Shown here piece by piece: positions 511 through 60,609 of a stretch of 64,000 nucleotides of DNA (its first letter is position 1; each line of letters opens with the position of its first letter). The DNA is taken from the NCBI RefSeq assembly GCF_006345805.1, contig NC_042997.1:185876001-185940000 (forward strand), given 5' to 3'. Under the pieces are notes generated by a model. The model worked only from the letters and a program-made list of their open reading frames with translations, was not told the origin of the DNA and made no database searches. A program made the translations under genes and the position numbers. The DNA is from Octopus sinensis (taxonomy: Eukaryota).

Positions 511-768
511 CCTTCTACAGTCACAAGGTCTGGAACCCTAGGGAAAGGGAATAGTCTCGATTGCAGTGCGTAACTGATTCTTATTTTCTCGACCACGAAA
601 GGGTGAAAGGCAAAATCGGCCTCATCAGAATTTAGACTCAGAACATAAGACAGACAAAATGCTTAGCAGCATTTTAGCCGTTCATTTGAATTCAGAAAAC
701 GCAGACTGATAAAATGCCGCTACGCATTTCAGCCGGCGTGATAAGAATTCTGCCAGTTCGCCGCTTTA
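511..768 (-). mobile_element. Degenerate SINE family A copy with partly duplicated head
   Basis: Reverse complement matches the family-A head (GGCGGCGAACTGGCAGAA...) and core (TTTGCCTTTCACCCTTTCGTGGTCGAG); many substitutions. Confidence 0.7.
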
Positions 769-878: not shown

Positions 879-1109
879 AGGCGGCGAGCTGGCAGAAACT
901 TTAGCGGGCCGGGCGAAATGCTTAGCGGCATTTCGTCTGTCGTTACGCACTGATTTCAAATTCCGCCGAGGTCGACTTTGCCTTTCATCATCTCGGGGTC
1001 GATAAATAAAGTACCAGTTTCGCACTCGGTCGATGTAATCGACTTAATCCCTTTGCCTGTCCTTGTTTGTCCCCTCTATGTTTATCCCCTTGTGGGTAGT
1101 AAAGAAATA
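879..1109 (+). mobile_element. SINE family A, tail type 1 (A1), full-length monomer with ~16-bp TSD
   Basis: tRNA-like head with B-box-like TTTCAAATTCC (consensus GTTCAAATTCC), core GTCGACTTTGCCTTTCATC..GGGGTCGATAAATAAAGTACCAG, tail ending GTAAAGAAATA. Flanked by TATATGTTGCTTGAAT (863-878) and TATATGTTGCATTGAAT (1110-1126). Confidence 0.9.
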
Positions 1110-4822: not shown

Positions 4823-5628
4823 TACTCTTTACTCTTTTACATGTTTCTGTCATGAGACTGTGGCCATGCTGGAGCACCGCCTTTAGTCGATCAAATCGAC
4901 CCCAGGACTTATTCATTGTAAGGCTAGTACTTATTCTATCGGTCTCTTTTGCCGAACAACTAAGTTACGGGAACTTAAACAAACCAGCCTCGGTTGTCAA
5001 ACGATGTTGGGGGGGAGGACACAGATACACAACATACATATATATAATCTATACTTATATTTATATTATCTTATATATATATTCTACTTATTATACATTA
5101 CTCTTTTATGTACACTTTTTTATGTACATTCCTTTATGTAGACTGATTTGTTCTGCTTTTTATATTTAACCCGACAGTCTCTTATGTGGTGGTTTAATAA
5201 AGTATGTGATTGAGTATTATCTGATAATTGATATTTGATTTAGATTATTTCTCCATTTTCTATCTTGTATTAGTAATTTGTAGTAAATCATTTTACCTTT
5301 GCCCATATATACAGTAAATGAATTGATTGCATCGCAATCATTAACATTTATGTATTAACTTTTTGGGTACTTCACTAGCAGTATATTGGATATATGTTAT
5401 CCACGGAGGGTTGCATTTACAACCCCTATCTCAATTTGTAACTATATATATACATATATACGAGGGGATTCTTTCAGTTTCCGTCCACCAAATCGACTCA
5501 CAAGGCTTCGGTCGGCCCGAGGCTATAGTAGAAGACACATGCCCAATGAACTGGGCATATATAGTTTTTGAACCCGGAACCATGTGGTTGGTAAGCAAGC
5601 TACTTACCACACAGCCACTCCTGCGCCC
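4823..5628 (-). mobile_element. SINE family B (tRNA head + CORE-like + microsatellite + tail) split by a ~400-bp insert in its central (TA)n
   Basis: Tail 4823-5030 and head 5455-5628 match intact B copies; unrelated AT-rich sequence occupies ~5060-5445. Confidence 0.85.
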
Positions 5629-18277: not shown

Positions 18278-18690
18278 TATTTCTTTACTACCCACAAGGG
18301 GCTAAGCACAGAGGGGGACAAACAAGGACAGACAAAGGGATTAAGTCGATTGCATCGATCCCAGTGCGTAACTGGTACTTAATTTATCGACTCCGAAAGG
18401 ATGAAAGGCAAAGTCGACCTCGGCGGAATTTGAACTCAGAACGTAAAGACAGACAAAATACTTATTTCTTTACTACCCACAAGGGCTAAACACAGAGAGG
18501 ACAAACAAGGACAGACAAACGGATTAAGTCGATTATATCGACCCCAGTGCGTAACTGGTACTTAATTTATCGACCCTGAAAGGATGAAAGGCAAAGTTGA
18601 CCTCGGCGGAATTTGAACCCAGAACGTAACGGCAGACGAAATACGGCTACGCATTTCGCCCGGCGTGCTAACGTTTCTGCCAGCTCGGCA
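18278..18690 (-). mobile_element. SINE A head-to-tail dimer (A1 + headless A1)
   Basis: Minus-strand junction ...GTAAAGAAATA|AGTATTTTGTCTG near 18462. Confidence 0.9.
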
Positions 18691-18903: not shown

Positions 18904-19315
18904 GTGAAAGCGCATGGTTCAGTGGTTTGAGTATCGGGCTCACAATCATGACGTAATGAGTTCGATTATCGGACTGGGCTGTGTGTTGTGTTCTTGAGCA
19001 AGACACTTTGTTTCACATTGCTCCAGTTTACTCAGCTGTAGAAATGAGTCGCTACATCACTAGTGCCAAGCTGTATTGGTGCTTGCCTTTCCTTTTCTTT
19101 ACTGCTCACAAGGGGCTACACACAGAGGGGACAAACAAGGACAGACAAACGGACTTGCTTTTCCGTTGGATAACATCAGTGGCTTGGAGAGGGAAGGCCG
19201 GAATGCATAGGCGACTGCTGGTCTTCCATAAACAAACTTGCCCCGACTTGTGCCTCGGAAGAGAACTTTCTAGGTGAAATCACATGGTCATTCATGACCA
19301 AAGGGGGGTCTTTTT
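18904..19315 (+). mobile_element. SINE family E (E2 tail) with a nested 61-bp SINE-A1 tail (19093-19153, minus)
   Basis: tRNA head + TTCTTGAGCAAGACACTT CORE-like motif; the insert is flanked by CTTGCCTTTCC (19082-92) and CTTGCTTTTCC (19154-64). Confidence 0.8.
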
Positions 19316-19450
19316 TTATACTGTTGTGTCTTCTCCCTAATTTTGTGGTTCCTCAAAAGAAACGATAGAATAAGTACCAGAGCCACAAATAAGCACTGGG
19401 ATCGATTTATTACTATGTCTTCCCCCTAGCAATAAGTCTATTTTCAACCC

Positions 19451-19480
19451 TTAGCCTGATGAGCAATGCGAAACCGGTTC
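19451..19480 (+). ncRNA. Isolated minimal hammerhead core, helix I disrupted
   Basis: CTGATGA(19456-62)-GCAATGC-GAAAC-CG-GT-T; palindromic ACCGGT helix III; the flanks do not pair. Confidence 0.4.
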
Positions 19481-24571: not shown

Positions 24572-24789
24572 ACGCCTTCTTTAGGGGCAGAAGTGGGTGT
24601 GTGGTAAGTAGCTTCAGTGCTTCCCGAACCTCAGTGTTTCGGCAAAAGAAATAAATAGAATAAGTACTAGGTTTCAAGAAATAACCCTTGGTGTCGATTC
24701 ATTCGACTAAAATCTTTTGAAGGTAGTGCTCCAGCATGGCCGCAGTAAAATGACTGAAACAAGTAAAATATCAGTATAAAGTTGTCTAT

Positions 24790-25560
24790 GTGTATGCGCG
24801 TGTGTGTGTGAATTTGTGATTTTGTGCATGAGTGTGTGTGTATGTGCGTGAGTTTGTGCTTTTGTGCGTGTATGTGTGTGTGTGTGTTTGTGCTTTTGTG
24901 CGTGTGTGCGTGTGTTTGTGTGTGTGCGTTTGTGCTTTTGTGCGTGTTTGTGTGTGTTTGTGTGTGTGAGTTTGTGCTTTTGTGCATGTATGTGTGTGTG
25001 TGTTTGTGCTTTTGTGCGTGTGTGCATGTATGTGTGTGTGTGTTTGTGCTTTTGTGCGTGTTTGTGTGTGTTTGTGTGTGTGCGTTTGTGCTTTTGTGCG
25101 TGTTTGTTTGTGTGTGTGTGTGTCAGTTTGTGCAGTTGTGCATATGTGTTTGTGTGTGTGAGTTTGTGCTTTTGTACATGTGTGTGTGTGTGTGTTTATG
25201 TGTGTGTGTGTGAGTTTGTGCTTTTGTGCATGTGTGTGTGTTTGTGTGTGAGTGTGCTTTTGTACATGTGTCTGTGTGTGTGTTTATGTGTGTGTGTGTG
25301 AGTGTGCTTTTGTGCATGTGTGTGTGTTTGTTTGTTTGTGTGTGTGTCAGTTTGTGCTGTTGTGCATGTGTGTGTGTGTGTTTGTGTGTGTGTGAGTTTG
25401 TGCATGTATGTGTGTGTGAGTGTGCTTTTGTGCATGTGTGTGTGTGTGTGTGAGTTTGTACATTTGTTCATGTGTGTGTGTTTATGTGTGTGTTTGTATG
25501 TGCGTGAGCTTGTGCTTCTGTGCATGTGTGTACGCATATGCGCATGCGCCTATGCGTATG
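24790..25560. repeat. Compound minisatellite, unit ~TTTGTGCTTTTGTGCRTG(TG)n
   Basis: More than 20 copies of the TTTGTGCTTTTGTGC-like core separated by variable (TG)n. Confidence 0.9.
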
Positions 25561-26473: not shown

Positions 26474-26809
26474 AACAGCATTTTCGTCGTGGTTATACAA
26501 AGACTGCGTGTTCACTTATATTTATCTTATACCAAAGAAACTCTGCGAATACCTTTACTCTTTATCACCGTTGTCATCTCAACTCCTTGCTTCTTTAATA
26601 TAGTGTCCGACTATTGAAGGAACCCTATCTTTCCATTTCTGTCCATTTTGTTTCGTAGCTCAGAGTAGTGATTCTTATAACCAAGAGTACCCAATGCCTT
26701 TTATACACATGACAAATGTTTCAAAAATCTAACAGATCTCAAACTTCTTCAATTTTACATTTCTCTTTACGTTCTGAGTTCAAATTCTTCCGAGGTCTAC
26801 TTTGCCTTT

Positions 26810-27140
26810 CATCCTTTCATCCTTTGCGCTGTGCCCAATAAGGTTGCTTTTTGCAAGACATCAATCTTGCATAAGATTTCCAATTGCCTTAAGTTTTGAA
26901 GTTTCAATGGGATTGAGCCCAACGCTCTGATCGCCACTGGTATCACTTCTACATTATCCTCTCGCATTACATACAGTCTTGTCATTTCCACTTTTAATTC
27001 GGAGTACTTGGTGATTTTTTCAACCTCTTTACTCACAACATTCATGTCATTTGGTATGGCTACATCTGACAGTATTTGTCTCTCTTATTCAATATGACAA
27101 TATCCAGCCGATGGTGTTCGATTACACGGTTCGTTTGAAA
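26810..27140 (-). pseudogene. R4/Dong-like LINE endonuclease (RLE) C-terminal fragment
   Basis: SKEVEKITKYSELKVEMTRLY...VEVIPVAIRALG...VLQKATLLGTAQ. Confidence 0.8.
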
Positions 27141-27425: not shown

Positions 27426-27820
27426 GGAGTAAAATGTACGAAGCCCAGTATACCCATCATGACAACCCGTCTAATAAGGGTACACCACGCACATGCATCA
27501 CGACCATATGTCCGCGACATGGTGATCTCATATCAAGATAAACAGCACATGACCTTGCAGGTGGGGCCCAGTTAGAAATTTTTTCAGGTCGAATAGCCCA
27601 TCCCGCTCAAAAGGTCCCTAAATAAGGATTGCTTAAGGATGTCGAACGAAACATCCATGTTTCCAAAGGTGAATTATTCAAACCCCTCACTACTTCTGCT
27701 CGTGATCAGAGATGCACATATCATCAGCCACAAAGGGACATGCTCAGCTGGTTAAGGTCAAGCAACTGAGCCCATTTTTTATACCAAGACAAAACCATGT
27801 ACATGATAACACTTCCTGAC
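27426..27820 (-). mobile_element. Family D retroposon (internally deleted), joined at its 3' end to the R4-like 3' end
   Basis: Collinear with 55215-55770 apart from a deletion. Confidence 0.8.
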
Positions 27821-27830
27821 TGGAAGTGTT

Positions 27831-28186
27831 AAGGCGGTGAGCTGGCAGAATCGTTAGCACGCCGGGCGAAATTCTTTGCGGTATTTCGTCTGCCATTACG
27901 TTCTGAGTTCAGATTCCGCCGAGGTCGACTTTGCCTTTCATCCTTTCGGGGTCGATTAAATAAGTACCAGTTACACACTGGGATCGATATAATCGACTTA
28001 ATCCGTTTGTCTGTCCTTGTTTGTCCTCTCTGTGTTTAGCCCCTTGTGGGTAGTAAAGAAATAAGTATTTCGTTTGGTCGACTTTTCCTGTCATCCTTTC
28101 GGAGTCGATACAATAAGTACTGGACTCAATGTAATCAACTTACCCTCCACTAAAATTTCAAGCCTTTTTCCTATAGTAGAAAGGAT
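27831..28186 (+). mobile_element. SINE A composite: A2-type head + A1 unit + deleted A2 unit
   Basis: Junction GTAAAGAAATA|AGTATTTCG at 28063; the last unit has tail 2 (AAAATTTCAAGCC...TAGTAGAAAGG). Confidence 0.88.
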
Positions 28187-28187
28187 G

Positions 28188-28261
<74 letters not shown>

Positions 28262-28280
28262 CATTATTATTATTATTATC

Positions 28281-28314
<34 letters not shown>

Positions 28315-28360
28315 TCATTATTATTATTATTATTATTATTGTTGTTGTTGTTGCTGTTGT
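28186..28360. repeat. (ATT)n microsatellite
   Basis: Direct inspection. Confidence 0.95.
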
Positions 28361-30067: not shown

Positions 30068-30120
<53 letters not shown>

Positions 30121-30239
30121 TGTAGTAGTAGTAACGCTGATTGTGTTTTCATTCTGTTTTAATAGTTATATTCATGTTACTAATATTTACGACGGACTTG
30201 AAATTGTAGTAATGGCGGTGGTGGCGGTGCTGCTGCTGC

Positions 30240-30277
<38 letters not shown>

Positions 30278-30364
30278 AATCTGATTGTGTTTTGATTCTG
30301 TTTTAATAGTTATATTCGTGTTACTAATGTCTAAGACGGACATGAAATTGTAATAATGGTGGTG

Positions 30365-30416
<52 letters not shown>

Positions 30417-30655: not shown

Positions 30656-30955
30656 AAGGCTGTTAGCTGGCAAAAACGTTAGCACGCCGGGTGAAATGCT
30701 TAGCGGTATTTCGTCTGCCGTTGCGTTGTGAGTTCAAATTCCGCCGAGGTCAACTTTGCCTTTCATCCTTTCGGGGTCGATAAATTAAGTACCAGTTACG
30801 CACTGGGGTCGATATAATCGACTTAATACCTATGTCTGTCCTTGTTTGTCCCCCTCTGTGTTTAGCCCCTTGTGGGTAGTAAAGAAATAGGCATTTCGTC
30901 TGTCTTTACGTTCTGAGTTCAAATTCCGCTGAGGTCGATTTTTTCCATTTCATCC
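30656..30955 (+). mobile_element. SINE A dimer (second unit truncated)
   Basis: Junction GTAAAGAAATA|GGCATTTCGTCTG at 30889. Confidence 0.88.
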
Positions 30956-33987: not shown

Positions 33988-35040
33988 AGGTTTCGTCTGC
34001 CACTACGTTCTGAGTTCAATTTCCGCCGAGGTCGACTTTGCCTTTCATCATTTTTGGGTCGTTGAATTAAGTACCAGGGAAACACTGGGGTCGATGTAAT
34101 CGGCTTAATCCCTCCCCACAAATTCCAGGCCTTGTACCTAGAGTAGAAAGGAAAATTAATTTAACTATAAGGCGGTGAGCTAGCAGAAACTTTAACACGC
34201 CGGGCGAAATGCTTTGTGGTTTTTCGTATGTCTTTATGTTCTGAGTTCAAATTCGGCCGAGGTTGACTTTGCCTTTCATCCTTTCGGGGTCGATAAATTA
34301 TGTACCAGTGGAACACTGATTTCGATGTAATCGACTAGTCCCCTCCCGATAAATTTCAGGCCTCGTGCCTTTAATAGAAAATATTATTGTTGTCAGTGGT
34401 TTTTGTTGTGACTGATGCTGTCATATTTAATGAAGTTGTTTTGCCCCAAGCAACGCTGATGGAGCAATCTTATGATCATGAGTTTTCCAGCCGTAACCAT
34501 CCACTTGTTTTGTATATCAAGCAGTACATTGTCTAATCTATCCTCCGTTTGTTAAAACAAAGATAAGTTACGATGTGTGAGATTTAGCTCATTCTGTTTC
34601 ACGTGCTTTTGTTTTCTTTTTTACTGCAATTGTTTTAAATACTAATAGGCAGTATCGTTAGCACGCTGGGAAAAATGCTTAGCGGCATTTCGTCCGTTTT
34701 TACGTACTGAGTTCAAATTCCGTCGTGGTTGACCTTGACTTTCATCCTTTCACTTTCGGAACAGATAAACTGAGTTCCGGTTGAGTACTGGGGTCGATGT
34801 AATTGACTTTCGTTTCTCCATAAGACAGCTGACTTTAAGTCAAAATTTACAATTCATATCATTCGAGCGTTGTGGTATATATTCCGGCTTTTTAAGGTTC
34901 TGAATTCAAATCTCACCGAGGTTAGCTTGCCTTCCACCCTTTCGGGGTCGATAACATAATGCACTAGTCAAGTCATGTACTCGATGGTATCGACTTTTCT
35001 CCTATTCCACAATCTAGTCTTGTGCCTATTCGAGAAACAG
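33988..35040 (+). mobile_element. Cluster of four SINE A (tail type 2) copies (~33988-34150, 34168-34385, 34650-34840, 34880-35040)
   Basis: Each has the TTCTGAGTTCAAAT / TTGCCTTTCATCC / GGGGTCGAT modules; increasingly diverged. Confidence 0.8.
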
Positions 35041-35454: not shown

Positions 35455-35670
35455 ATTGGTTTCAGATTTTGGCACAAGGCCAGCGATCTCAGGATAAGGG
35501 GCTTAGTCGATTACGTCGATCCTTGTCTTCAACTGGTACTTATTTTATCGAACCCGAAAGGATGAACGGTAAAGTTAACGTCGGCGGAATTTGAACTCAG
35601 AACGTACAGACGGACGAAATGCCATCAAACATTTTGCACGGCGTGCTAACGGTTCGGCCGGCTCGCTGCC
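35455..35670 (-). mobile_element. SINE A (tail type 2)
   Basis: Reverse of head/core/tail 2. Confidence 0.8.
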
Positions 35671-42408: not shown

Positions 42409-42531
42409 CACACCCGCACATATACATACATACTTAAATACATGCATACATACATACATACTTACAAACATACATATATGTATACACACACATAGGCATG
42501 TATTTGTATGTTGATATTTAAAATAAAATTT

Positions 42532-43122
42532 AAGGCGGCGAGCTGGCAGAAACGTTAGACGTCGGGCGAAAAGCTTAGCGGTGGTATTTCGTCTGCCGTT
42601 ACGTTCTGAGTTCAAATTCCGCCGAGGTCGACTTTGCCGTTCATCCTTTCGGGGTCGATTAAATATGTACTAGTTACGCACTGGGGTCGATATAATCGAC
42701 TTAATCCCTTTGTCTGTCCTTGTTTGTCCTCTCTGTGTTTAACCCCTTGTGGATAGAAAAGAAATAGGTATTTCGTCTGCCGTTACGTTCTGAGTTCAAA
42801 TTCCGCCAAGGTCGACTTTGCCTTTCATCCTTTCGGGGTCGATTAAATTAAGTACCAGTTACGCACTGGGGTCAATATAATCGACTCAATCCCTTTGTCT
42901 GTCCTTGTTTGTCCTCTCTGTGTTTAGCCGCTTGTGGATAGTAAAGAAATAGGTATTTCGTCTGCCGCTACGTTCTGAGTTCAAATTCCGCCGATGTCGA
43001 CTTTGTCTTTCATCCTTTCGAGGTCGATAAATTAAGTACCATTTGCGCACTGGGGTCGATCTAATCGACTGGCCTCCTCCCCCAAAATTTCGGGCCTTGC
43101 GCATAGAGTAGAAAAGCATATT
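42532..43122 (+). mobile_element. SINE A trimer (head + A1 + A1 + tail-2 unit)
   Basis: Junctions AAAGAAATA|GGTATTTCGTCTG at 42766 and 42951 (185-bp unit); GGT duplication at 42580-42585 in the head at the same site. Confidence 0.92.
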
Positions 43123-43818
43123 AAAATAAAATTTGTTTCCTTCATGTGACACCATATTAGCCAGAAGGGCATGTGATGTTATTACCAGCAGGTAAATGTA
43201 TCTCTTACATACACTCGTATATGTATGCTCTACGACACAAAATATACGCGGAAACTCGCCCACGCGCACCAACATACATCTACGTCTATACATATTTGTA
43301 TGTGGGTGTAAATGTATGTTTTAAAGTACCTGAGCTCCTTCATACATTAATTTATCTGCACGCTAGAATGCATATATGCATGTGTGTGTGTGCATCTGTG
43401 AGTATATGTATCAATGTGTGCGTGTATGTGTGTGTATAGACAATCAGGTATGTATAGATATATTTCTTTATACGTACGCGGGTGTGTGTGTTTTTGCGTT
43501 TGTGTGTATGAGTGTGCGTATGTGTGAATGTATGTGTTTGTGTGTGTGTAAGTGTATGTGTGTGTGCGCATGTGTGTGTTTGTGTTTTTATGTGAGTGTG
43601 TGAATGTTTGAAAGTGCTGGCAGAAGGAACCGATGTGGTTTTACAATATTTTGAACCATTAAATCAAAGTGCCAACTTCAGGTGCTTACGTAACAATTGT
43701 GTTAGCATTTGACTTGTTATCCGTCTGAAATTTATACACCACATACTTTACTTTATTAATTTATAATAAATATATTTCTGTACGTGTGACATTTAATCAG
43801 TCAGTGAGTGCACCATCA

Positions 43819-45889: not shown

Positions 45890-47090
45890 TATAGACTTTG
45901 CACAACTTCTAACGCTGGATATGTACTACGGTGCTAGCTGTTCACTACCAGTGAACTATGGTGACACCCCTTATTTTTCGAGCACCTTCCGGAGTATTCG
46001 AGCGATTCCAAACAGTGCTGTTTTCTGCAAGTTCCCCCCCCCTTTATTGCAGCCTCTATCTGTTCTATATACTTCTCAAGATTTTTACTCGCTGTTCTCA
46101 TGACTTCGACAATTATTGGTACTACTACCACCTTTTTCATCGACCACAACTGCTTAACCTCCCAAGCTAACCTGTCATATCCTTCGACTTTTCTTTCTTC
46201 CTTATCGCATACCTTGTTGTCAGCTGGGAATACTATATCTATGATCCAGCATCGTTTGCCTTCTTTCTCAGTTAACACTATGTCTGGTTTCCTATTCTCC
46301 TTCTCATGATCACACTGAATCATAAAATCCCATAGGATCTTTGCATTATTATTTTCGACGATGCCTTCGGATTTATCTTCATAGCACGTTTTTGCTCTGT
46401 AGCCTTGAATTCCATCTGGTCCCGCTTGTTTTAGTTCTTGCAACCATTCAGCATCCTTCTTGTGCTCCTTGTCTTTGCTCCAGATGCAACTCCCAAACCT
46501 TTGACTTTCAATGTTTTCTAGTATCAACTTTTCATCTGTACACCCTCCATTTATTTCTTTATAGAATCTCTTCTGATCTACTCTGTATAGCCTATCCTGC
46601 TGGTAGCACTTCATTCTTTGGTCGTATCTTACCATCTTTACTTTCTTTGCTACGAGGCGCTATTTCAGTTCCTCCATTACCGCTTTCAGTCCCTTTCTCT
46701 TTCAATATCACACTTTCTGTTCAGTGTCCTGTATTTTTGTTTGCTTTTAAGCTCCCCTTTCTCTTTTCGGTCTAACACAGAAGTGTCTTTCGAGACCACG
46801 TGTAACTCCGCCTGTATTCTTCTTTTCCACCATGGATATTTTCTTTTGTCACTACAATATTTCTTTTTCTTGACATTAGCAACCCACATTTTCTGCTACG
46901 ACAATACTTGCTGCCTTGATCAAATTGCTTGCTTCTGTGATATTTTTTGTTCTGATGTATTTCAGAATTTCATTGACATTTTTTCGTTTCTTGGTTCAAT
47001 TTCCAACAATCAACCTTTTTAAGGTTGCAAATAATGTCGCTATCGTTCTCAATCTTTTGTCGTAGATTGCCTTTTGCTCGTCTGTCTTGT
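45890..47090 (-). mobile_element. Internally deleted R4/Dong-like non-LTR retrotransposon (RT removed); 233-aa ORF 45934-46635 with RLE endonuclease
   Basis: Pre-RT motifs (YQQDRLYRVDQKRFYKEI, IWS..KEH.KDAEWL) joined via GPDGIQGY directly to ENNNAKILWDFMIQCD...RKPDIV...IIDIVFPAD...KEERK..YDRL...VPIIV. Confidence 0.88.
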
Positions 47091-49050: not shown

Positions 49051-50070
49051 AAGGCACGTGCATCACAACCATGTGTGCGTGACATGGTGATATCATAGCA
49101 AGATAAACAGTGCATGACCTTGCAGGTGGTGCCAAGTTAATATTTTTTCCAGGTCAAAAGATCCCTGAATAAGAGTTATTTAAGGATGATGAACGAAACA
49201 CCCATGTTTCCAGAGGTGAATCATTCATACCCCAAAGAATTACTCTCAACAGTTGGCTATGATGCTCCCCCCACAACTTTTGCTCGTGATCAGAGATGCA
49301 CATATCGTCAGCCAATAAGAGACATGTTCACCTATTTAAGATCAAGCAACTGACGAGCAAATCTGGTAATGAGCAGAGTATTTGCTGTAGCCTATCTTTT
49401 ACACCAAGACAAAATATGTACATCATAACACTTCCAATCAGTTAAGATCAGAAACCATGAGAGCCGCTACCTGGTACTGCATCAAAGGATCAATATTATC
49501 ATAATTATCATGTGAAATTCATATTTTACTCCATTATCAAAGTAATACTGGAGTAAAATATATGAAGCCTAGAATACCCATCATGACTACTCGTCTTATA
49601 AGGGTACACCAGGCACATGCATTACAACTGTATGTGCACGACATGGCGATCTTATACCAAGATAAACAGCGCATGATCTTGCCGGTGGGGCACAGTTAAA
49701 ATTTTCTTCAGATCGAGTAGCCCATCCCACTCAAAAGGTCCATGATTAAAGGTTGTTTAAGGATGTTGAACGAAACAACCATGTTTACAGAAGTGAATCA
49801 TTGAAACCCCAAAGAATTCCTCACTACAGATTGCTATGATGCTCCCCCACCACTTCTGCTCCTGATTAGAGATTCACATATCGTCAGCCACCAAGGGACA
49901 CGCTCAAGTGGTTAAGGTCAAACAACTGACAAGAAAATGTGTGGCATTGAGCTGAAAATTTCCTGTAGCCCATCTTTTACACCAAGACAAAACAACATGT
50001 ACATGATAACACTTCCAATCATTTAAGATCAGAAGCCATGAGAGCCAGTGCCTGGTACTGCATCAGAGCA
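49051..50070 (-). mobile_element. Two tandem family D retroposons (49051-49492; 49547-50070)
   Basis: Each is the reverse complement of 55215-55770; the first lacks the 3' end and has an internal deletion. Confidence 0.85.
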
Positions 50071-55218: not shown

Positions 55219-55770
55219 GCCCTGATGCAGTACCAGGCAGTGGCTCTCATGGCTTCTGATCTTAACTGATTGGAAGTGTTATCATGTACATTGTTTTGTC
55301 TTGGTATAAAAGATGGGCTACAGCAAATATTCTGCTCAATACCTCAGATGCTTGTGTCAGTTGTTTGACCTTAACCAGTTGAGCATGTCCCTTAGTGGCT
55401 GACGATATGTGCATCTCTGATCACGAGCAGAATTAGTGGGGGAGCATCATAGCCATGTGTTGAGAGGGATTCTTTGGGTTGAATAGTTCACCTCTGGAAA
55501 CAGGTTGTTGTTTCGTTCAACATCCTTAAAAACCCTTATTCAGGGACCGTTTGAGCGGGATGGGCTACTCAACCTGAAGAAAATTCTAACTGGGCCCCCA
55601 CCTGCAAGGTCATGTGTGTTTATCTTGATATGAGATCCCATGTCGCGCACATATGGTTGTGATGCATGTGCCTGGTGTACCTTTATCAGACGGGTAGTCA
55701 TGATGGGTATATTGGGCTTCGTATATTTTACCCCAGTGTCACTTTGATGGCATGCACTGCTCTCTCACTC
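55215..55770 (+). mobile_element. Family D retroposon, full length (~555 bp), embedded in (AAT)n
   Basis: (AAT)n-AAATGCCCTGATGCAGTACC...GCACTGCTCTCTCACTC-(AAT)n; no ORF; no A/B boxes seen. Confidence 0.85.
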
Positions 55771-57438: not shown

Positions 57439-57538
57439 NNNNNNNNNNNNNNNNNNNNNNNNNNNNNNNNNNNNNNNNNNNNNNNNNNNNNNNNNNNNNN
57501 NNNNNNNNNNNNNNNNNNNNNNNNNNNNNNNNNNNNNN
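57439..57538. other. Assembly gap (100 N)
   Basis: Run of exactly 100 N, typical of a scaffolding placeholder of unknown true size. Confidence 0.99.
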
Positions 57539-59240: not shown

Positions 59241-59367
59241 TAAAAAATAGGTCCAACCGGTTGTGTACAAAACACCGTCCCTAAATGTGCTTAATGTGTG
59301 TGACTGTGTATATAAGTGTGTGCACATGTGTGTACGAGTGCATGTATACATATAGGTGTATATATAT

Positions 59368-59783
59368 AAGGCGACGAGCTGGCAGAAACGTTAACGCGCC
59401 GGGCGAAATGCTTAGCGGTATTTTGTCTGTCGTTACGTTCTGAGTTCAAATTCCGCCGAGGTCGACTTTACCTTTCATCCTTTCGGGGTCGATAAATAAA
59501 GTACCAGTTTCGCACTGGGGTCGATGCAATCGCCGTAATCCTTTTGTCTGTCCTTGTTTGTCCCCTCTGTGTTTAGCACCTTGTGGGTAATAAAGAAATA
59601 GGTATTTTGTCTTTCGTTACGTTTTGAGTTCAAATTCCGCCGAGGTCGACTTTGCCTTTCATCCTTTCAGGGTCGATGAATAAAGTACCAGTTTCGCACT
59701 GGGGTCGATGCAATCGACTTAATCCCTTTGTCTGTCCTTGTTTGTCCCCTCTATGTTTAGCCTCTTGTGGGCAATAAAGAAAT
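59368..59783 (+). mobile_element. SINE A dimer inside an 18-bp TSD
   Basis: Junction AAAGAAATA|GGTATTTTG at 59600; ATATAGGTGTATATATAT at 59350-67 and 59784-801. Confidence 0.93.
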
Positions 59784-60609
59784 ATATAGGTGTATATATA
59801 TTAAACTTTGATGCTCTATCAATCTGAAAAGTGCTGCAGAATATTAAAATTTATACCAGTTATGAAGTTGTTCAGTGACTCAGAAACAATTTTTTTTTGC
59901 GAATATAGCTCTTCTCTTCCTACGAATTTTTGACTCGATGCCAATTCGGCAAATAAAAATAATTAAATTGATTGACTAACACCCTGCAACAACGAATTCG
60001 AGTACTGTGGTAGTTCTGCATGAAACAGTTGCCAAATCTCCCTCAAATGATACTTTACAGTAATAAAAAAAAAATACTTTGAAAAATGCACTCCCATGTT
60101 CACTACACATAAGAACAGGAAGAGATAGTTAAGAATAGAATGCTTTTGATCATAGATCTGCGCGGTTTAATTAACTTAAGGCTAAACACCAGGAACAAAA
60201 GCAAAACCTTCCTATAATTTCTATTTGTAGTGGACGAGATCAACAAGATACAAATGTTTTGGCCGCAGGAACAAAACGGCATCATTGAAATTATATATAA
60301 AATACAATAAATAATTGGCTAAAAATCTTATATTTCAGTAATTTCGTTATCAGGATCCATAGTTAGACTGGATACTTTCACTTCTTGGGCGATGTTATTT
60401 TTGTAGGAAAAAGATATGATTTGTGGAAATCCTAGCTAATATTCTTGAGCTTCAATGCATTTTGTAATTTTATCTACCGCTTTTACCTTCTTTTCCTTTG
60501 CGTTTCTTTATATATTTATTTATTAGGATTTTTTGGTAGTTCTTATTTTTTGGGATTCTTTTTTTCTCTTCAACGTTTAACGTGGTTATTGTTGTATTTA
60601 AGTTGTATT

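What the first reader, a model, noticed from the sequence alone, without database searches (positions are those of the whole stretch)
42532..43122. SINE-A multimers with one fixed junction: possible site-specific self-insertion at the loop of its own hairpin
Seen: five of the six head-bearing copies containing an A1 tail are head-to-tail multimers (18278-18690, 27831-28186, 30656-30955, 42532-43122, 59368-59783). Every junction is ...AAAGAAATA|(G/A)G(T/C)ATTT, within 1 nt of the same site. In the monomer that site is 926/927, the 3' edge of the loop (TTAGCG) of an 11-bp extended anticodon-like stem (911-921 pairs with 928-938). The last unit can carry the other tail (tail 2; 27831, 42532). At 27831 the head has A2-type variants (GAATCGTTAG) while the inner unit is A1. 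At 42580 the head carries a GGT duplication at exactly this site. Established: TPRT leaves staggered nicks, and 5' junctions can be resolved by annealing cDNA to homologous target DNA, as in R2 elements. Inference: A1 RNA repeatedly integrates into existing A copies at this loop, and the cDNA anneals in register, producing ~185-bp tandem units. That would be a SINE using its own family as a preferred target. Alternatives: a dimeric master copy, or rolling-circle reverse transcription of a circularised RNA.
Basis: partly seen in the sequence, partly recalled or inferred. Interest (0 to 1): 0.8.

Follow-up and report, generated by a model that had tools for sequence, protein, structure and literature searches.

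The report
SINE tandem arrays, one fixed junction
A short retrotransposon (SINE) in this animal genome usually occurs as 2-3 head-to-tail units joined at the same nucleotide, the edge of a hairpin loop; this most likely arises when the reverse transcriptase copies several RNAs in series, not when the element inserts into its own copies.

Summary
Five of the six head-bearing copies with the "A1" tail are head-to-tail arrays. All six internal junctions join the exact SINE 3' end (...AAAGAAATA) to the first base of the 3' arm of an 11-13-bp hairpin.

The five arrays are five different unit combinations, so the junction formed at least about four times independently. Its left side is always the precise RNA 3' end, so it was made during retrotransposition and not by DNA duplication.

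- There is no hidden target duplication inside heterogeneous arrays.
- Heads are not older than first units.
- Normal A1 insertion sites start with TATA, whereas the junction is followed by GGTA.
- Two solo headless copies in non-SINE DNA start at the same position.
- Target-site duplications (TSDs) flank whole arrays.

Best reading (about 0.45): serial template copying. cDNA synthesis ends at the loop edge and re-initiates on another A1-tailed RNA, and the array inserts in one event.

Multimeric source genes, blunt self-insertion and RNA-level ligation remain possible. No outside copies of the family could be retrieved, so the genome-wide census was not done. The architecture matches the SINE-derived tandem repeats already described in squamates.

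The parts
42532..42582 (+). Head of the focal array (A-box-like region plus the 5' arm and loop of the hairpin); GGT duplication at 42580-42585
42583..42766 (+). Unit 1 (3' hairpin arm, B-box-like motif, body, A1 tail); ends ...AAAGAAATA
42767..42951 (+). Unit 2 (headless, A1 tail); shares the private variants GATTAAAT and GTGGATAG with unit 1
42952..43122 (+). Unit 3 (headless): A1-like body joined to tail 2 (43069-43122)
42514..42531 (.). 5' target-site duplication of the whole trimer (ATATTTAAAATAAAATTT); the 3' copy is at 43118-43134
59368..59784 (+). Dimer: head 59368-59416, u1 59417-59600, u2 59601-59784. An 18-bp TSD at 59350-59367 and ~59783-59801 (its first bases overlap the SINE's terminal TA) flanks the whole dimer
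18278..18690 (-). Dimer with a 5'-truncated head (18646-18689), u1 18463-18645, u2 18278-18462. The units belong to different subtypes
27831..28186 (+). Array: head 27831-27879, A1 unit 27880-28063, then a degenerate unit with two deletions and tail 2 (28064-28186), followed by (ATT)n. The 5' side joins a broken copy of another repeat through a 14-nt filler
30656..30955 (+). Array: head 30656-30704, u1 30705-30889, u2 30890-30955 (3'-truncated, older-type variants)
880..1108 (+). The only A1-tailed monomer; hairpin at 911-938; 16-17-bp TSD TATATGTTGCwTTGAAT
33988..34157 (+). Solo headless copy (tail 2) that starts at the junction position in non-SINE DNA. It is followed after about 12 bp by the full-length copy 34169-34390. 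A possible shared TSD (TATTATTGTT) flanks the pair
26757..26818 (+). Headless fragment starting within about 2 nt of the junction position (CATTTC...)
34644..34995 (+). Older-subfamily head-to-tail pair; the second unit (34867-34995) restarts at profile position ~37-43, inside the 5' arm of the same hairpin
551..766 (-). Old copy with an internal duplication [2-84]+GAA+[33-163]; the restart is at the 5' base of the hairpin
19094..19153 (-). A1 tail module attached to a different repeat family (tail exchange)

Best explanation
The arrays are made at the RNA/cDNA stage of a single retrotransposition event, by serial template copying.

**Proposed steps**
1. The partner LINE's reverse transcriptase starts on one SINE RNA, which may carry any tail.
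2. cDNA synthesis ends at a discrete point: the 3' edge of the loop of the long anticodon-like hairpin (monomer position 57/58). This happens either because the RNA is cut there or because the enzyme leaves the template there.
3. The cDNA 3' end is then used to initiate on the 3' end of another (or the same) A1-tailed SINE RNA. This initiation is at exactly the nucleotide used in normal target-primed initiation.
4. The cycle repeats until a full-length RNA is copied to its 5' end.
5. The product (head + n headless units) is joined to the target, leaving one target-site duplication around the whole array.

The last six bases of the A1 tail (GAAAUA) mimic the 5' arm of the hairpin (GAAAUG) and can pair with the first bases of the headless unit (UAUUUC). 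That pairing may dock the acceptor RNA next to the stop point, which would explain why only A1 tails occur to the left of junctions.

**Shown**
- The junction is fixed.
- Its left side is the exact SINE 3' end.
- TSDs flank whole arrays.
- Units within arrays are heterogeneous.
- Arrays are specific to A1 tails.
- Solo headless copies share the same 5' end.

**Inferred**
- The template jump itself.
- The cause of the stop at the loop edge.
- The docking role of the tail.

Some arrays may also be secondary copies of array-bearing source loci.
For: 1. The left side of all six junctions is the exact SINE 3' terminus ...GAAATA, the same terminus that abuts the TSD in regular insertions. Genomic DNA has nothing special at that base, so this points to an RNA-end or initiation event.
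2. TSDs of 18-20 bp (59368) and 14-17 bp (42532) flank entire arrays.
3. The five arrays are five different unit combinations: X-Y', X-old tail 2, Y-old type, X'-X'-A1 body/tail 2, and Z'-Z'. This implies repeated de novo junction formation.
4. Solo headless copies in non-SINE DNA start at the same position (33988; about 26757). Roughly p = 0.05 for 2 of 6 truncated copies falling in a 10-nt window; this is my own estimate.
5. Other restart points in older copies (profile positions 33 and about 37-43) also lie in the hairpin.
6. Arrays follow only A1 tails: 5/6 versus 0/8, p = 0.003. The tail end GAAAUA is complementary to the only (T)ATTTC in the element, 2 nt beyond the junction.
7. Template switching is evidently frequent in this genome. 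The A body carries three different tails, the A1 tail also sits on another repeat, and the 27831 array has a snap-back-like filler at its 5' junction.
8. Experimental precedent: R2 proteins make longer TPRT products by jumping from completed cDNA to further 3'UTR RNA molecules, and head-to-tail tandem insertions joining a template 3' end to a full-length or truncated 5' end were recovered in cells (PMC11371274).
Against: - No direct evidence exists for an RNA 5' end or an RT stop at position 58.
- An enzyme moving 3'->5' has already melted the 3' arm when it reaches the loop edge, so a simple stall is not an obvious cause.
- Unit counts peak at 2 (1, 4 and 1 arrays with 1, 2 and 3 units), not a geometric decline, although the exact test gives only p = 0.11.
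- 18278_u1 and 27831_u1 share the variant AATCCG and an 'ATA|AG' junction. That could mean the junction was inherited from a common array-bearing source.
- The last units of 27831 and 30656 are more diverged than their first units, as a nested insertion would predict.
- The sample is only five arrays from one 64-kb window.
Confidence: 0.45

Rival explanations
1. Multimeric source genes. The junction arose once or a few times, and dimeric or trimeric loci are then transcribed from the head's promoter and retrotransposed as units, as with dimeric Alu. Diversity would come from later recombination among arrays.
For: - TSDs flank whole arrays.
- The modal size is 2 units.
- 5 of 6 A1 copies are arrays.
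- 18278_u1 and 27831_u1 share AATCCG plus the ATA|AG junction, and the second units of 18278 and 30656 share GTCTGTCTTTACG while their first units share GTCTGCCGTT.
- Units of 59368, and 42532 u1/u2, share private variants.
Against: - Five arrays give five unit combinations, with last units carrying an A1 tail, an old tail-2 unit, or an A1 body with tail 2. If array types were equally frequent, at least about 6 types would be needed for all five to differ; this is my own estimate.
- The model does not explain solo headless copies starting at the same base.
- It does not explain why the first junction formed at the loop edge.
Confidence: 0.2
2. One reading: A1 units insert, essentially bluntly, into existing family-A copies at the loop edge. 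This could be through an endonuclease preference or a structure-prone nick at the hairpin, so that the head and last unit belong to an older host element.
For: - Only A1 tails lie to the left of junctions, while last units can carry any tail.
- The last units of 27831 (12/77 differences plus two deletions) and 30656 (7/64) are more diverged than their first units (8/184 and 5/184).
- The 27831 head has GAATC and GGCGGTGAGC, as older copies do.
- The GGT duplication at 42580-42585 could be a 3-bp target duplication.
Against: - There is no hidden TSD: the first 22 nt of the left unit differ from the right unit at 4/22 sites in 18278 and 30656, including diagnostic positions, whereas normal TSDs are 14-20 bp.
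- The model needs both a site-specific target and an insert that always begins at position 58. No out-of-register product (a half head followed by a full copy) is seen.
- Normal A1 targets begin TATA (3/3) whereas this site begins GGTA.
- Heads are not older than first units, and there is no age asymmetry in 18278, 42532 or 59368.
- The 59368 units share a private variant.
- Headless solo copies occur in non-SINE DNA.
Confidence: 0.12
3. RNA-level joining before reverse transcription. SINE RNA is cut in the anticodon-like loop, like a tRNA half. The 3' fragment is then ligated to the 3' end of another A1-tailed RNA, or to its own 3' end to form a circle, and the concatemer or circle is reverse-transcribed.
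For: - The junction lies at the 3' edge of the loop of a tRNA-anticodon-like stem.
- The tail end GAAAUA can replace the 5' arm and would hold the two ends together as exon halves are held in a tRNA.
- This accounts for A1 specificity, heterogeneous units and whole-array TSDs.
- Ligation of a template RNA 5' end to another RNA before cDNA synthesis has been proposed for retroelement products (PMC11371274).
Against: - There is no evidence for the cleavage or for suitable end chemistry.
- The head is not recognised as a tRNA by ARAGORN or Rfam.
- The rolling-circle version predicts identical units and headless arrays, whereas the units are heterogeneous and every array has a head.
Confidence: 0.08
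4. DNA-level tandem duplication (replication slippage, unequal crossing-over, satellite-like amplification) of inserted monomers.
For: - This is the origin suggested for SINE-derived satellites in squamates (PMC10702118).
- It could account for the step from 2 to 3 units in 42532, where u1 and u2 share private variants.
Against: - The left breakpoint is always the exact last base of the SINE, which genomic DNA does not mark.
- Slippage on the GAAAT direct repeats (positions 38 and 228 of the consensus) would give GAAAT|GCTTAGC, which is not what is observed.
- Chimeric arrays with different tails and subtypes cannot arise by duplicating one monomer.
- Intra-array distances are no smaller than inter-array distances.
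Confidence: 0.03

Closest known systems
SINE-derived satellites (sSat) of squamate reptiles (Vassetzky et al. 2023, PMC10702118)
   Same: Both are tandem repeats of a part of a SINE (the 3' part of the head with box B, the body, and the LINE-derived region; 130-215 nt). Both have one longer terminal unit that reaches the SINE terminus, and the same unit boundary recurs at many loci.
   Different: Here arrays have only 2-3 units. Units within an array are often of different subtypes or tails. The arrays are flanked by TSDs like ordinary insertions. The boundary is exactly the SINE 3' end joined to a hairpin-loop edge. The squamate paper offers no RNA-stage mechanism, and the host here is a different, non-reptile lineage.
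Multimeric full-length SINEs (B2, Dip/B1, Ves tandems; dimeric Alu)
   Same: Both are head-to-tail SINE units in a large share of copies. The origin of those multimers is openly debated between insertion into another copy's tail and retrotransposition of a dimeric template (PMC8466645).
   Different: Those multimers join complete units (tail to head). Here every non-first unit lacks the first 57 nt, and the joint lies inside the head.
Serial template jumping by non-LTR reverse transcriptases (R2)
   Same: In vitro, R2 proteins extend TPRT products by jumping from finished cDNA to further RNA 3' ends. Head-to-tail tandem transgene insertions with full-length or truncated 5' ends were recovered in cells (PMC11371274). 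The end-to-end jumping work of Bibillo & Eickbush 2004 is cited in PMC2881922.
   Different: The partner LINE here is unknown. The donor end is an internal, reproducible position (the hairpin loop edge) and not the true RNA 5' end. The products are fixed in a genome as the dominant form of a SINE subfamily.
Cephalopod CORE-type tRNA-derived SINEs (e.g. octopus OR2)
   Same: From memory only: the body motif ...TTTCATCC..GGGGTCGATAAATTAAGTACC... resembles the CORE domain. Octopus OR2 is listed as a CORE-SINE in PMC4758252. The AT-rich, microsatellite-rich context fits a cephalopod.
   Different: This was not tested. No reference sequence was available, and the host species could not be identified.

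Membership tests
LINE-mobilised SINE | Short, non-coding, dispersed multicopy element | tested here: met
   The monomer is about 230 bp. There are about 20 full or partial copies on both strands in 64 kb, with no meaningful ORF.
LINE-mobilised SINE | Variable-length target-site duplications directly flanking the element | tested here: met
   16-17 bp at 870, 18-20 bp at 59368, 14-17 bp at 42532, 9-10 bp at 35490.
LINE-mobilised SINE | Head derived from a tRNA, with pol III A and B boxes | tested here: inconclusive
   B-box-like GAGTTCAAATTCC and A-box-like TGGCAGAAACG motifs and a cloverleaf-like fold are present. However, ARAGORN finds no tRNA in the window, and Rfam finds none at E<=10 on two heads.
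LINE-mobilised SINE | 3' tail shared with a partner LINE | not testable with these tools
   No LINE carrying the A1 tail is in the window. The orphan A1 tail at 19094 sits on another short repeat, not on an ORF.
SINE-derived satellite (sSat) | Tandem units corresponding to part of a SINE, with an extended terminal unit reaching the SINE end | tested here: met
   The units are monomer positions 58-240, and the first unit carries the head.
SINE-derived satellite (sSat) | Arrays of four or more monomers, homogenised within loci, satellite-like chromosomal distribution | tested here: not met
   The maximum is 3 units, and intra-array identity (93-94%) is no higher than between arrays. Chromosomal distribution is not testable.
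Dimeric SINE propagated from a dimeric master (Alu-like) | Copies share the same unit composition, with position-specific diagnostic bases | tested here: inconclusive
   Five arrays give five combinations. However, 18278 and 30656 share a u1/u2-specific pattern at two sites, and 18278 and 27831 share a u1 variant plus the junction base. The sample is too small.
Site-specific (self-targeting) non-LTR insertion | Inserted unit bounded by a target duplication or deletion of host sequence, and host parts older than the insert | tested here: not met
   There is no hidden duplication in 18278 or 30656. Head versus first-unit divergence is not significant, and later units are not older in 3 of 5 arrays.
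Site-specific (self-targeting) non-LTR insertion | Target sequence matches the element's usual insertion-site preference | tested here: not met
   Regular A1 3' ends are followed by TATA (3/3), whereas junctions are followed by GGTA, AGTA or GGCA. The sample is small.

The most novel reading that the evidence does not exclude
The SINE RNA is processed like a tRNA. It is cut at the 3' edge of its anticodon-like loop, and the 3' fragment is re-joined in trans. The A1 tail's last six bases imitate the missing 5' arm of the stem and present the two RNA ends to a tRNA-type ligase, or dock the acceptor RNA for the reverse transcriptase. The SINE would thereby have evolved a tail that makes it concatenate, multiplying its LINE-recognition tails and B boxes with each insertion.
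Probability: 0.08. Interest if true: 0.8.

Novelty: new variant of a known kind. Interest (0 to 1): 0.45.

Why it matters
How SINE multimers and SINE-derived tandem repeats arise is an open question. The B2/Dip/Ves study states outright that the authors cannot tell insertion into another copy from retrotransposition of dimeric templates. The squamate sSat study offers only unequal recombination or repeated insertion at the same locus.

This family provides an unusually clean signature: the exact RNA 3' end joined to one nucleotide at a hairpin-loop edge, heterogeneous units, one TSD per array, and dependence on one tail type. That places junction formation at the reverse-transcription stage and makes the competing models testable with a genome assembly, population data and 5'-end RNA mapping.

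If confirmed, it would give a natural, genome-scale example of serial template copying by a LINE reverse transcriptase. It would also give a route from interspersed repeats to tandem repeats.

Tried and rejected
**Attempts to obtain more copies of the family (all failed)**
- A protein search with the SINE's open minus-strand frame across a junction found nothing.
- The 233-aa retroelement ORF at 45934-46635(-) has only 64-69% identical relatives on ENA eukaryote contigs of another species. L001 was checked by blastn, and L001 and L002 by an exact core-motif search; neither shows the SINE.
- Exact-pattern scans of metagenome and viral contigs gave only 19-31-bp chance matches.
- A literature search for the element's sequence gave nothing.

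**Explanations rejected**
- Assembly artefact: the units differ by 5-7% and the only gap is at 57439-57538.
- Segmental duplication of one array: the flanks are unrelated to each other. The only repetitive flank is another repeat family next to 27831.
- Microhomology slippage on the GAAAT direct repeats: it predicts the wrong junction.
- Rolling-circle copying as a general explanation: the units are heterogeneous and every array has a head.

**A TSD candidate reinterpreted.** The candidate for 27831 (ACCATGTACA) lies inside a neighbouring repeat copy, so that locus was reinterpreted as an irregular or chimeric 5' junction.

**Uninformative tests**
- Distance-based tests cannot separate the models, because a star-like young subfamily gives equal intra-array and inter-array distances.
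- Rfam and ARAGORN gave no tRNA assignment for the head.
- Pfam gave nothing for the 233-aa ORF.

Full report
**What is there**

The window is AT-rich, microsatellite-rich eukaryotic DNA. It is densely populated by a ~230-bp SINE: 20 matches to its 23-nt core against 0 expected by chance.

A monomer at 880-1108 is flanked by a 16-17-bp target-site duplication. Its parts are:
- a head with A-box- and B-box-like motifs;
- a long hairpin;
- a conserved body;
- a 66-nt 'A1' tail ending ...GTAAAGAAATA.

The same head and body occur with two other tails, 'tail 2' and 'tail 3', in older copies.

**Check of the observation**

All five multimers exist at the stated coordinates. In a profile built from 13 copies, every non-first unit starts at position 49/50, which is monomer position 58. 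All six junctions read AAAGAAATA|(G/A)G(T/C)ATTT.

The consensus hairpin CGGGCGAAAUGCU-UAGC-GGUAUUUCGUCUG folds at -16 kcal/mol, z = -3.6, and the repeated unit begins with the first base of its 3' arm. Pairing potential is kept in 85% of cells across 14 copies, against 40-55% in slid controls. There is no covariation beyond shuffles, so it is a conserved sequence feature and not demonstrably a selected structure.

The GGT duplication at 42580-42585 is real. Neither ARAGORN nor Rfam recognises the head as a tRNA, so 'tRNA-derived' rests on motifs alone.

**The junction was formed repeatedly, at the retrotransposition stage**

The arrays are independent insertions. Their flanks are unrelated and their TSDs differ.

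Subtype markers in body and tail define five different unit combinations in the five arrays:
- 18278: X then Y'.
- 27831: X then a degenerate old-type unit with tail 2.
- 30656: Y then an old-type unit.
- 42532: X', X', then an A1-like body with tail 2.
- 59368: Z' then Z'.

One or two ancestral dimers cannot give this without extensive later recombination.

The left side of every junction is the exact last base of the SINE, the same base that abuts the TSD in ordinary insertions. Genomic DNA does not mark that base, but an RNA 3' end or the RT initiation site does. This excludes DNA-level duplication as the origin. Slippage on the GAAAT direct repeats would in any case give a different joint.

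1. *Hidden target duplication.* With staggered nicks and in-register annealing, the first ~15-20 nt of the inserted unit would be a host-derived duplication identical to the start of the next unit. In the two clearly heterogeneous arrays they differ at 4/22 positions, including the same two diagnostic sites. Normal TSDs here are 14-20 bp. Any nested insertion would therefore have to be blunt, and would also have to begin at position 58.
2. *Age asymmetry.* Heads are not significantly more diverged than first units. The only nominal case, 30656 (p = 0.04), disappears at non-CpG sites. In 18278, 42532 and 59368 later units are no older than first units. Only 27831_u2 and 30656_u2 look older or belong to another subfamily. 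The 27831 head is equidistant from the A1 and older consensus (4/49 each).
3. *Shared private variants.* Both units of 59368 share a private tail variant, and 42532 u1 and u2 share GTGGATAG. This is unexpected for a host plus an unrelated insert.
4. *Target preference.* All three scorable A1 3' ends are followed by TATA, whereas the junction is followed by GGTA, AGTA or GGCA.
5. *Headless copies.* Two headless copies in non-SINE DNA begin at the same position (33988 and about 26757). So position 58 is a preferred 5' end even without a SINE target. The copy at 33988 and the full-length copy at 34169 may share one TSD, in an order (headless, then full) that nested insertion cannot produce.
6. 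*Out-of-register products.* None is seen (a half head followed by a full copy).

**What fits best**

One process explains the following together:
- the junction;
- the solo headless copies;
- the whole-array TSDs;
- the mixed unit types;
- the older restart points at profile positions 33 and ~37-43, which also lie in the hairpin.

In that process, cDNA synthesis ends at or in the hairpin and continues on the 3' end of another RNA. Serial template copying is documented for R2 proteins in vitro, and head-to-tail tandem insertions with truncated 5' ends have been recovered in cells (PMC11371274).

Template switching is evidently common in this genome:
- Tails are exchanged between families.
- The 27831 array joins a broken copy of another repeat through a snap-back-like filler.

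Arrays occur only after A1 tails (5/6 versus 0/8; p = 0.003). The A1 tail's last six bases, GAAAUA, mimic the 5' arm (GAAAUG) and are complementary to the only TATTTC in the element, 2 nt past the junction. I infer that this pairing helps place the acceptor RNA, but that step is not shown.

**What remains open**

Five arrays cannot separate de novo formation at each insertion from propagation of several array-bearing sources:
- Unit counts peak at two (exact p = 0.11 against a geometric model).
- Some variants are shared between arrays in a position-specific way.
- Pairwise distances are uninformative, because a young star-like subfamily gives equal intra-array and inter-array distances.

A blunt self-insertion and an RNA-ligation route are not excluded. 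Every attempt to obtain further copies of the family from public collections failed.

**Comparison with what is known**

The architecture (partial-SINE tandem units with one extended terminal unit, and the same boundary at many loci) matches the SINE-derived satellites of squamates (PMC10702118). Multimeric SINEs in general are common and of debated origin (PMC8466645). What is new here:
- the host lineage;
- the short TSD-flanked arrays of mixed units;
- the precise joint between the RNA 3' end and a hairpin-loop edge;
- the dependence on one tail type.

I therefore rate it a new variant of a known kind, of moderate interest, mainly because it makes the mechanism question testable.

Noticed in passing
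27520-27830; also 49086-49435, 49645-50016, 55272-55637(-): A second SINE-like repeat family (~370 bp, ending ...GCAT + (ATT)n). Its copy next to the 27831 array is broken at 27815 and joined to the SINE-A head through a 14-nt filler, TGACTGGAAGTGTT. The filler contains an inverted copy of the preceding AACACTTCC, as in snap-back synthesis or template switching.
   Followed up: partly
19094-19480 (-); related pieces near 4893, 20774, 23714, 37498, 39352, 55966, 57544: The 60-nt A1 tail module is attached to an unrelated repeat that has several copies in the window. This indicates that tail modules are exchanged between SINE families.
   Followed up: partly
28144-28340, 34111-34160, 34342-34395, 43069-43134: All tail-2 copies end in ATT/TAA-rich simple repeats or abut (ATT)n microsatellites. 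This hints that their partner LINE initiates on, or targets, (TAA)n-type repeats. Not tested.
   Followed up: no
45934-46635 (-): A 233-aa ORF from a degraded retroelement: C-terminal region, no RT domain, no Pfam match. Its relatives are 64-69% identical and lie on megabase-scale ENA contigs of another eukaryote, in TE-rich neighbourhoods.
   Followed up: partly
33988-34390: A headless tail-2 copy and a full-length tail-2 copy lie about 12 bp apart, and the pair may be bounded by a single TSD (TATTATTGTT). That would be a tandem in the opposite order to the A1 arrays.
   Followed up: partly
551-766 (-): An old family-A copy with a 52-nt internal duplication (profile [2-84]+GAA+[33-163]). Its second hairpin has a different sequence that still pairs (AAAATGCT/AGCATTTT).
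   Followed up: partly
57439-57538: A 100-base run of N (assembly gap).
   Followed up: yes
30089-30416 and 24789-25531: A 144-bp tandem repeat (2.3 copies) just upstream of the 30656 array, and a ~700-bp GT-rich minisatellite with 34-82-bp periods. Their nature was not examined.
   Followed up: no
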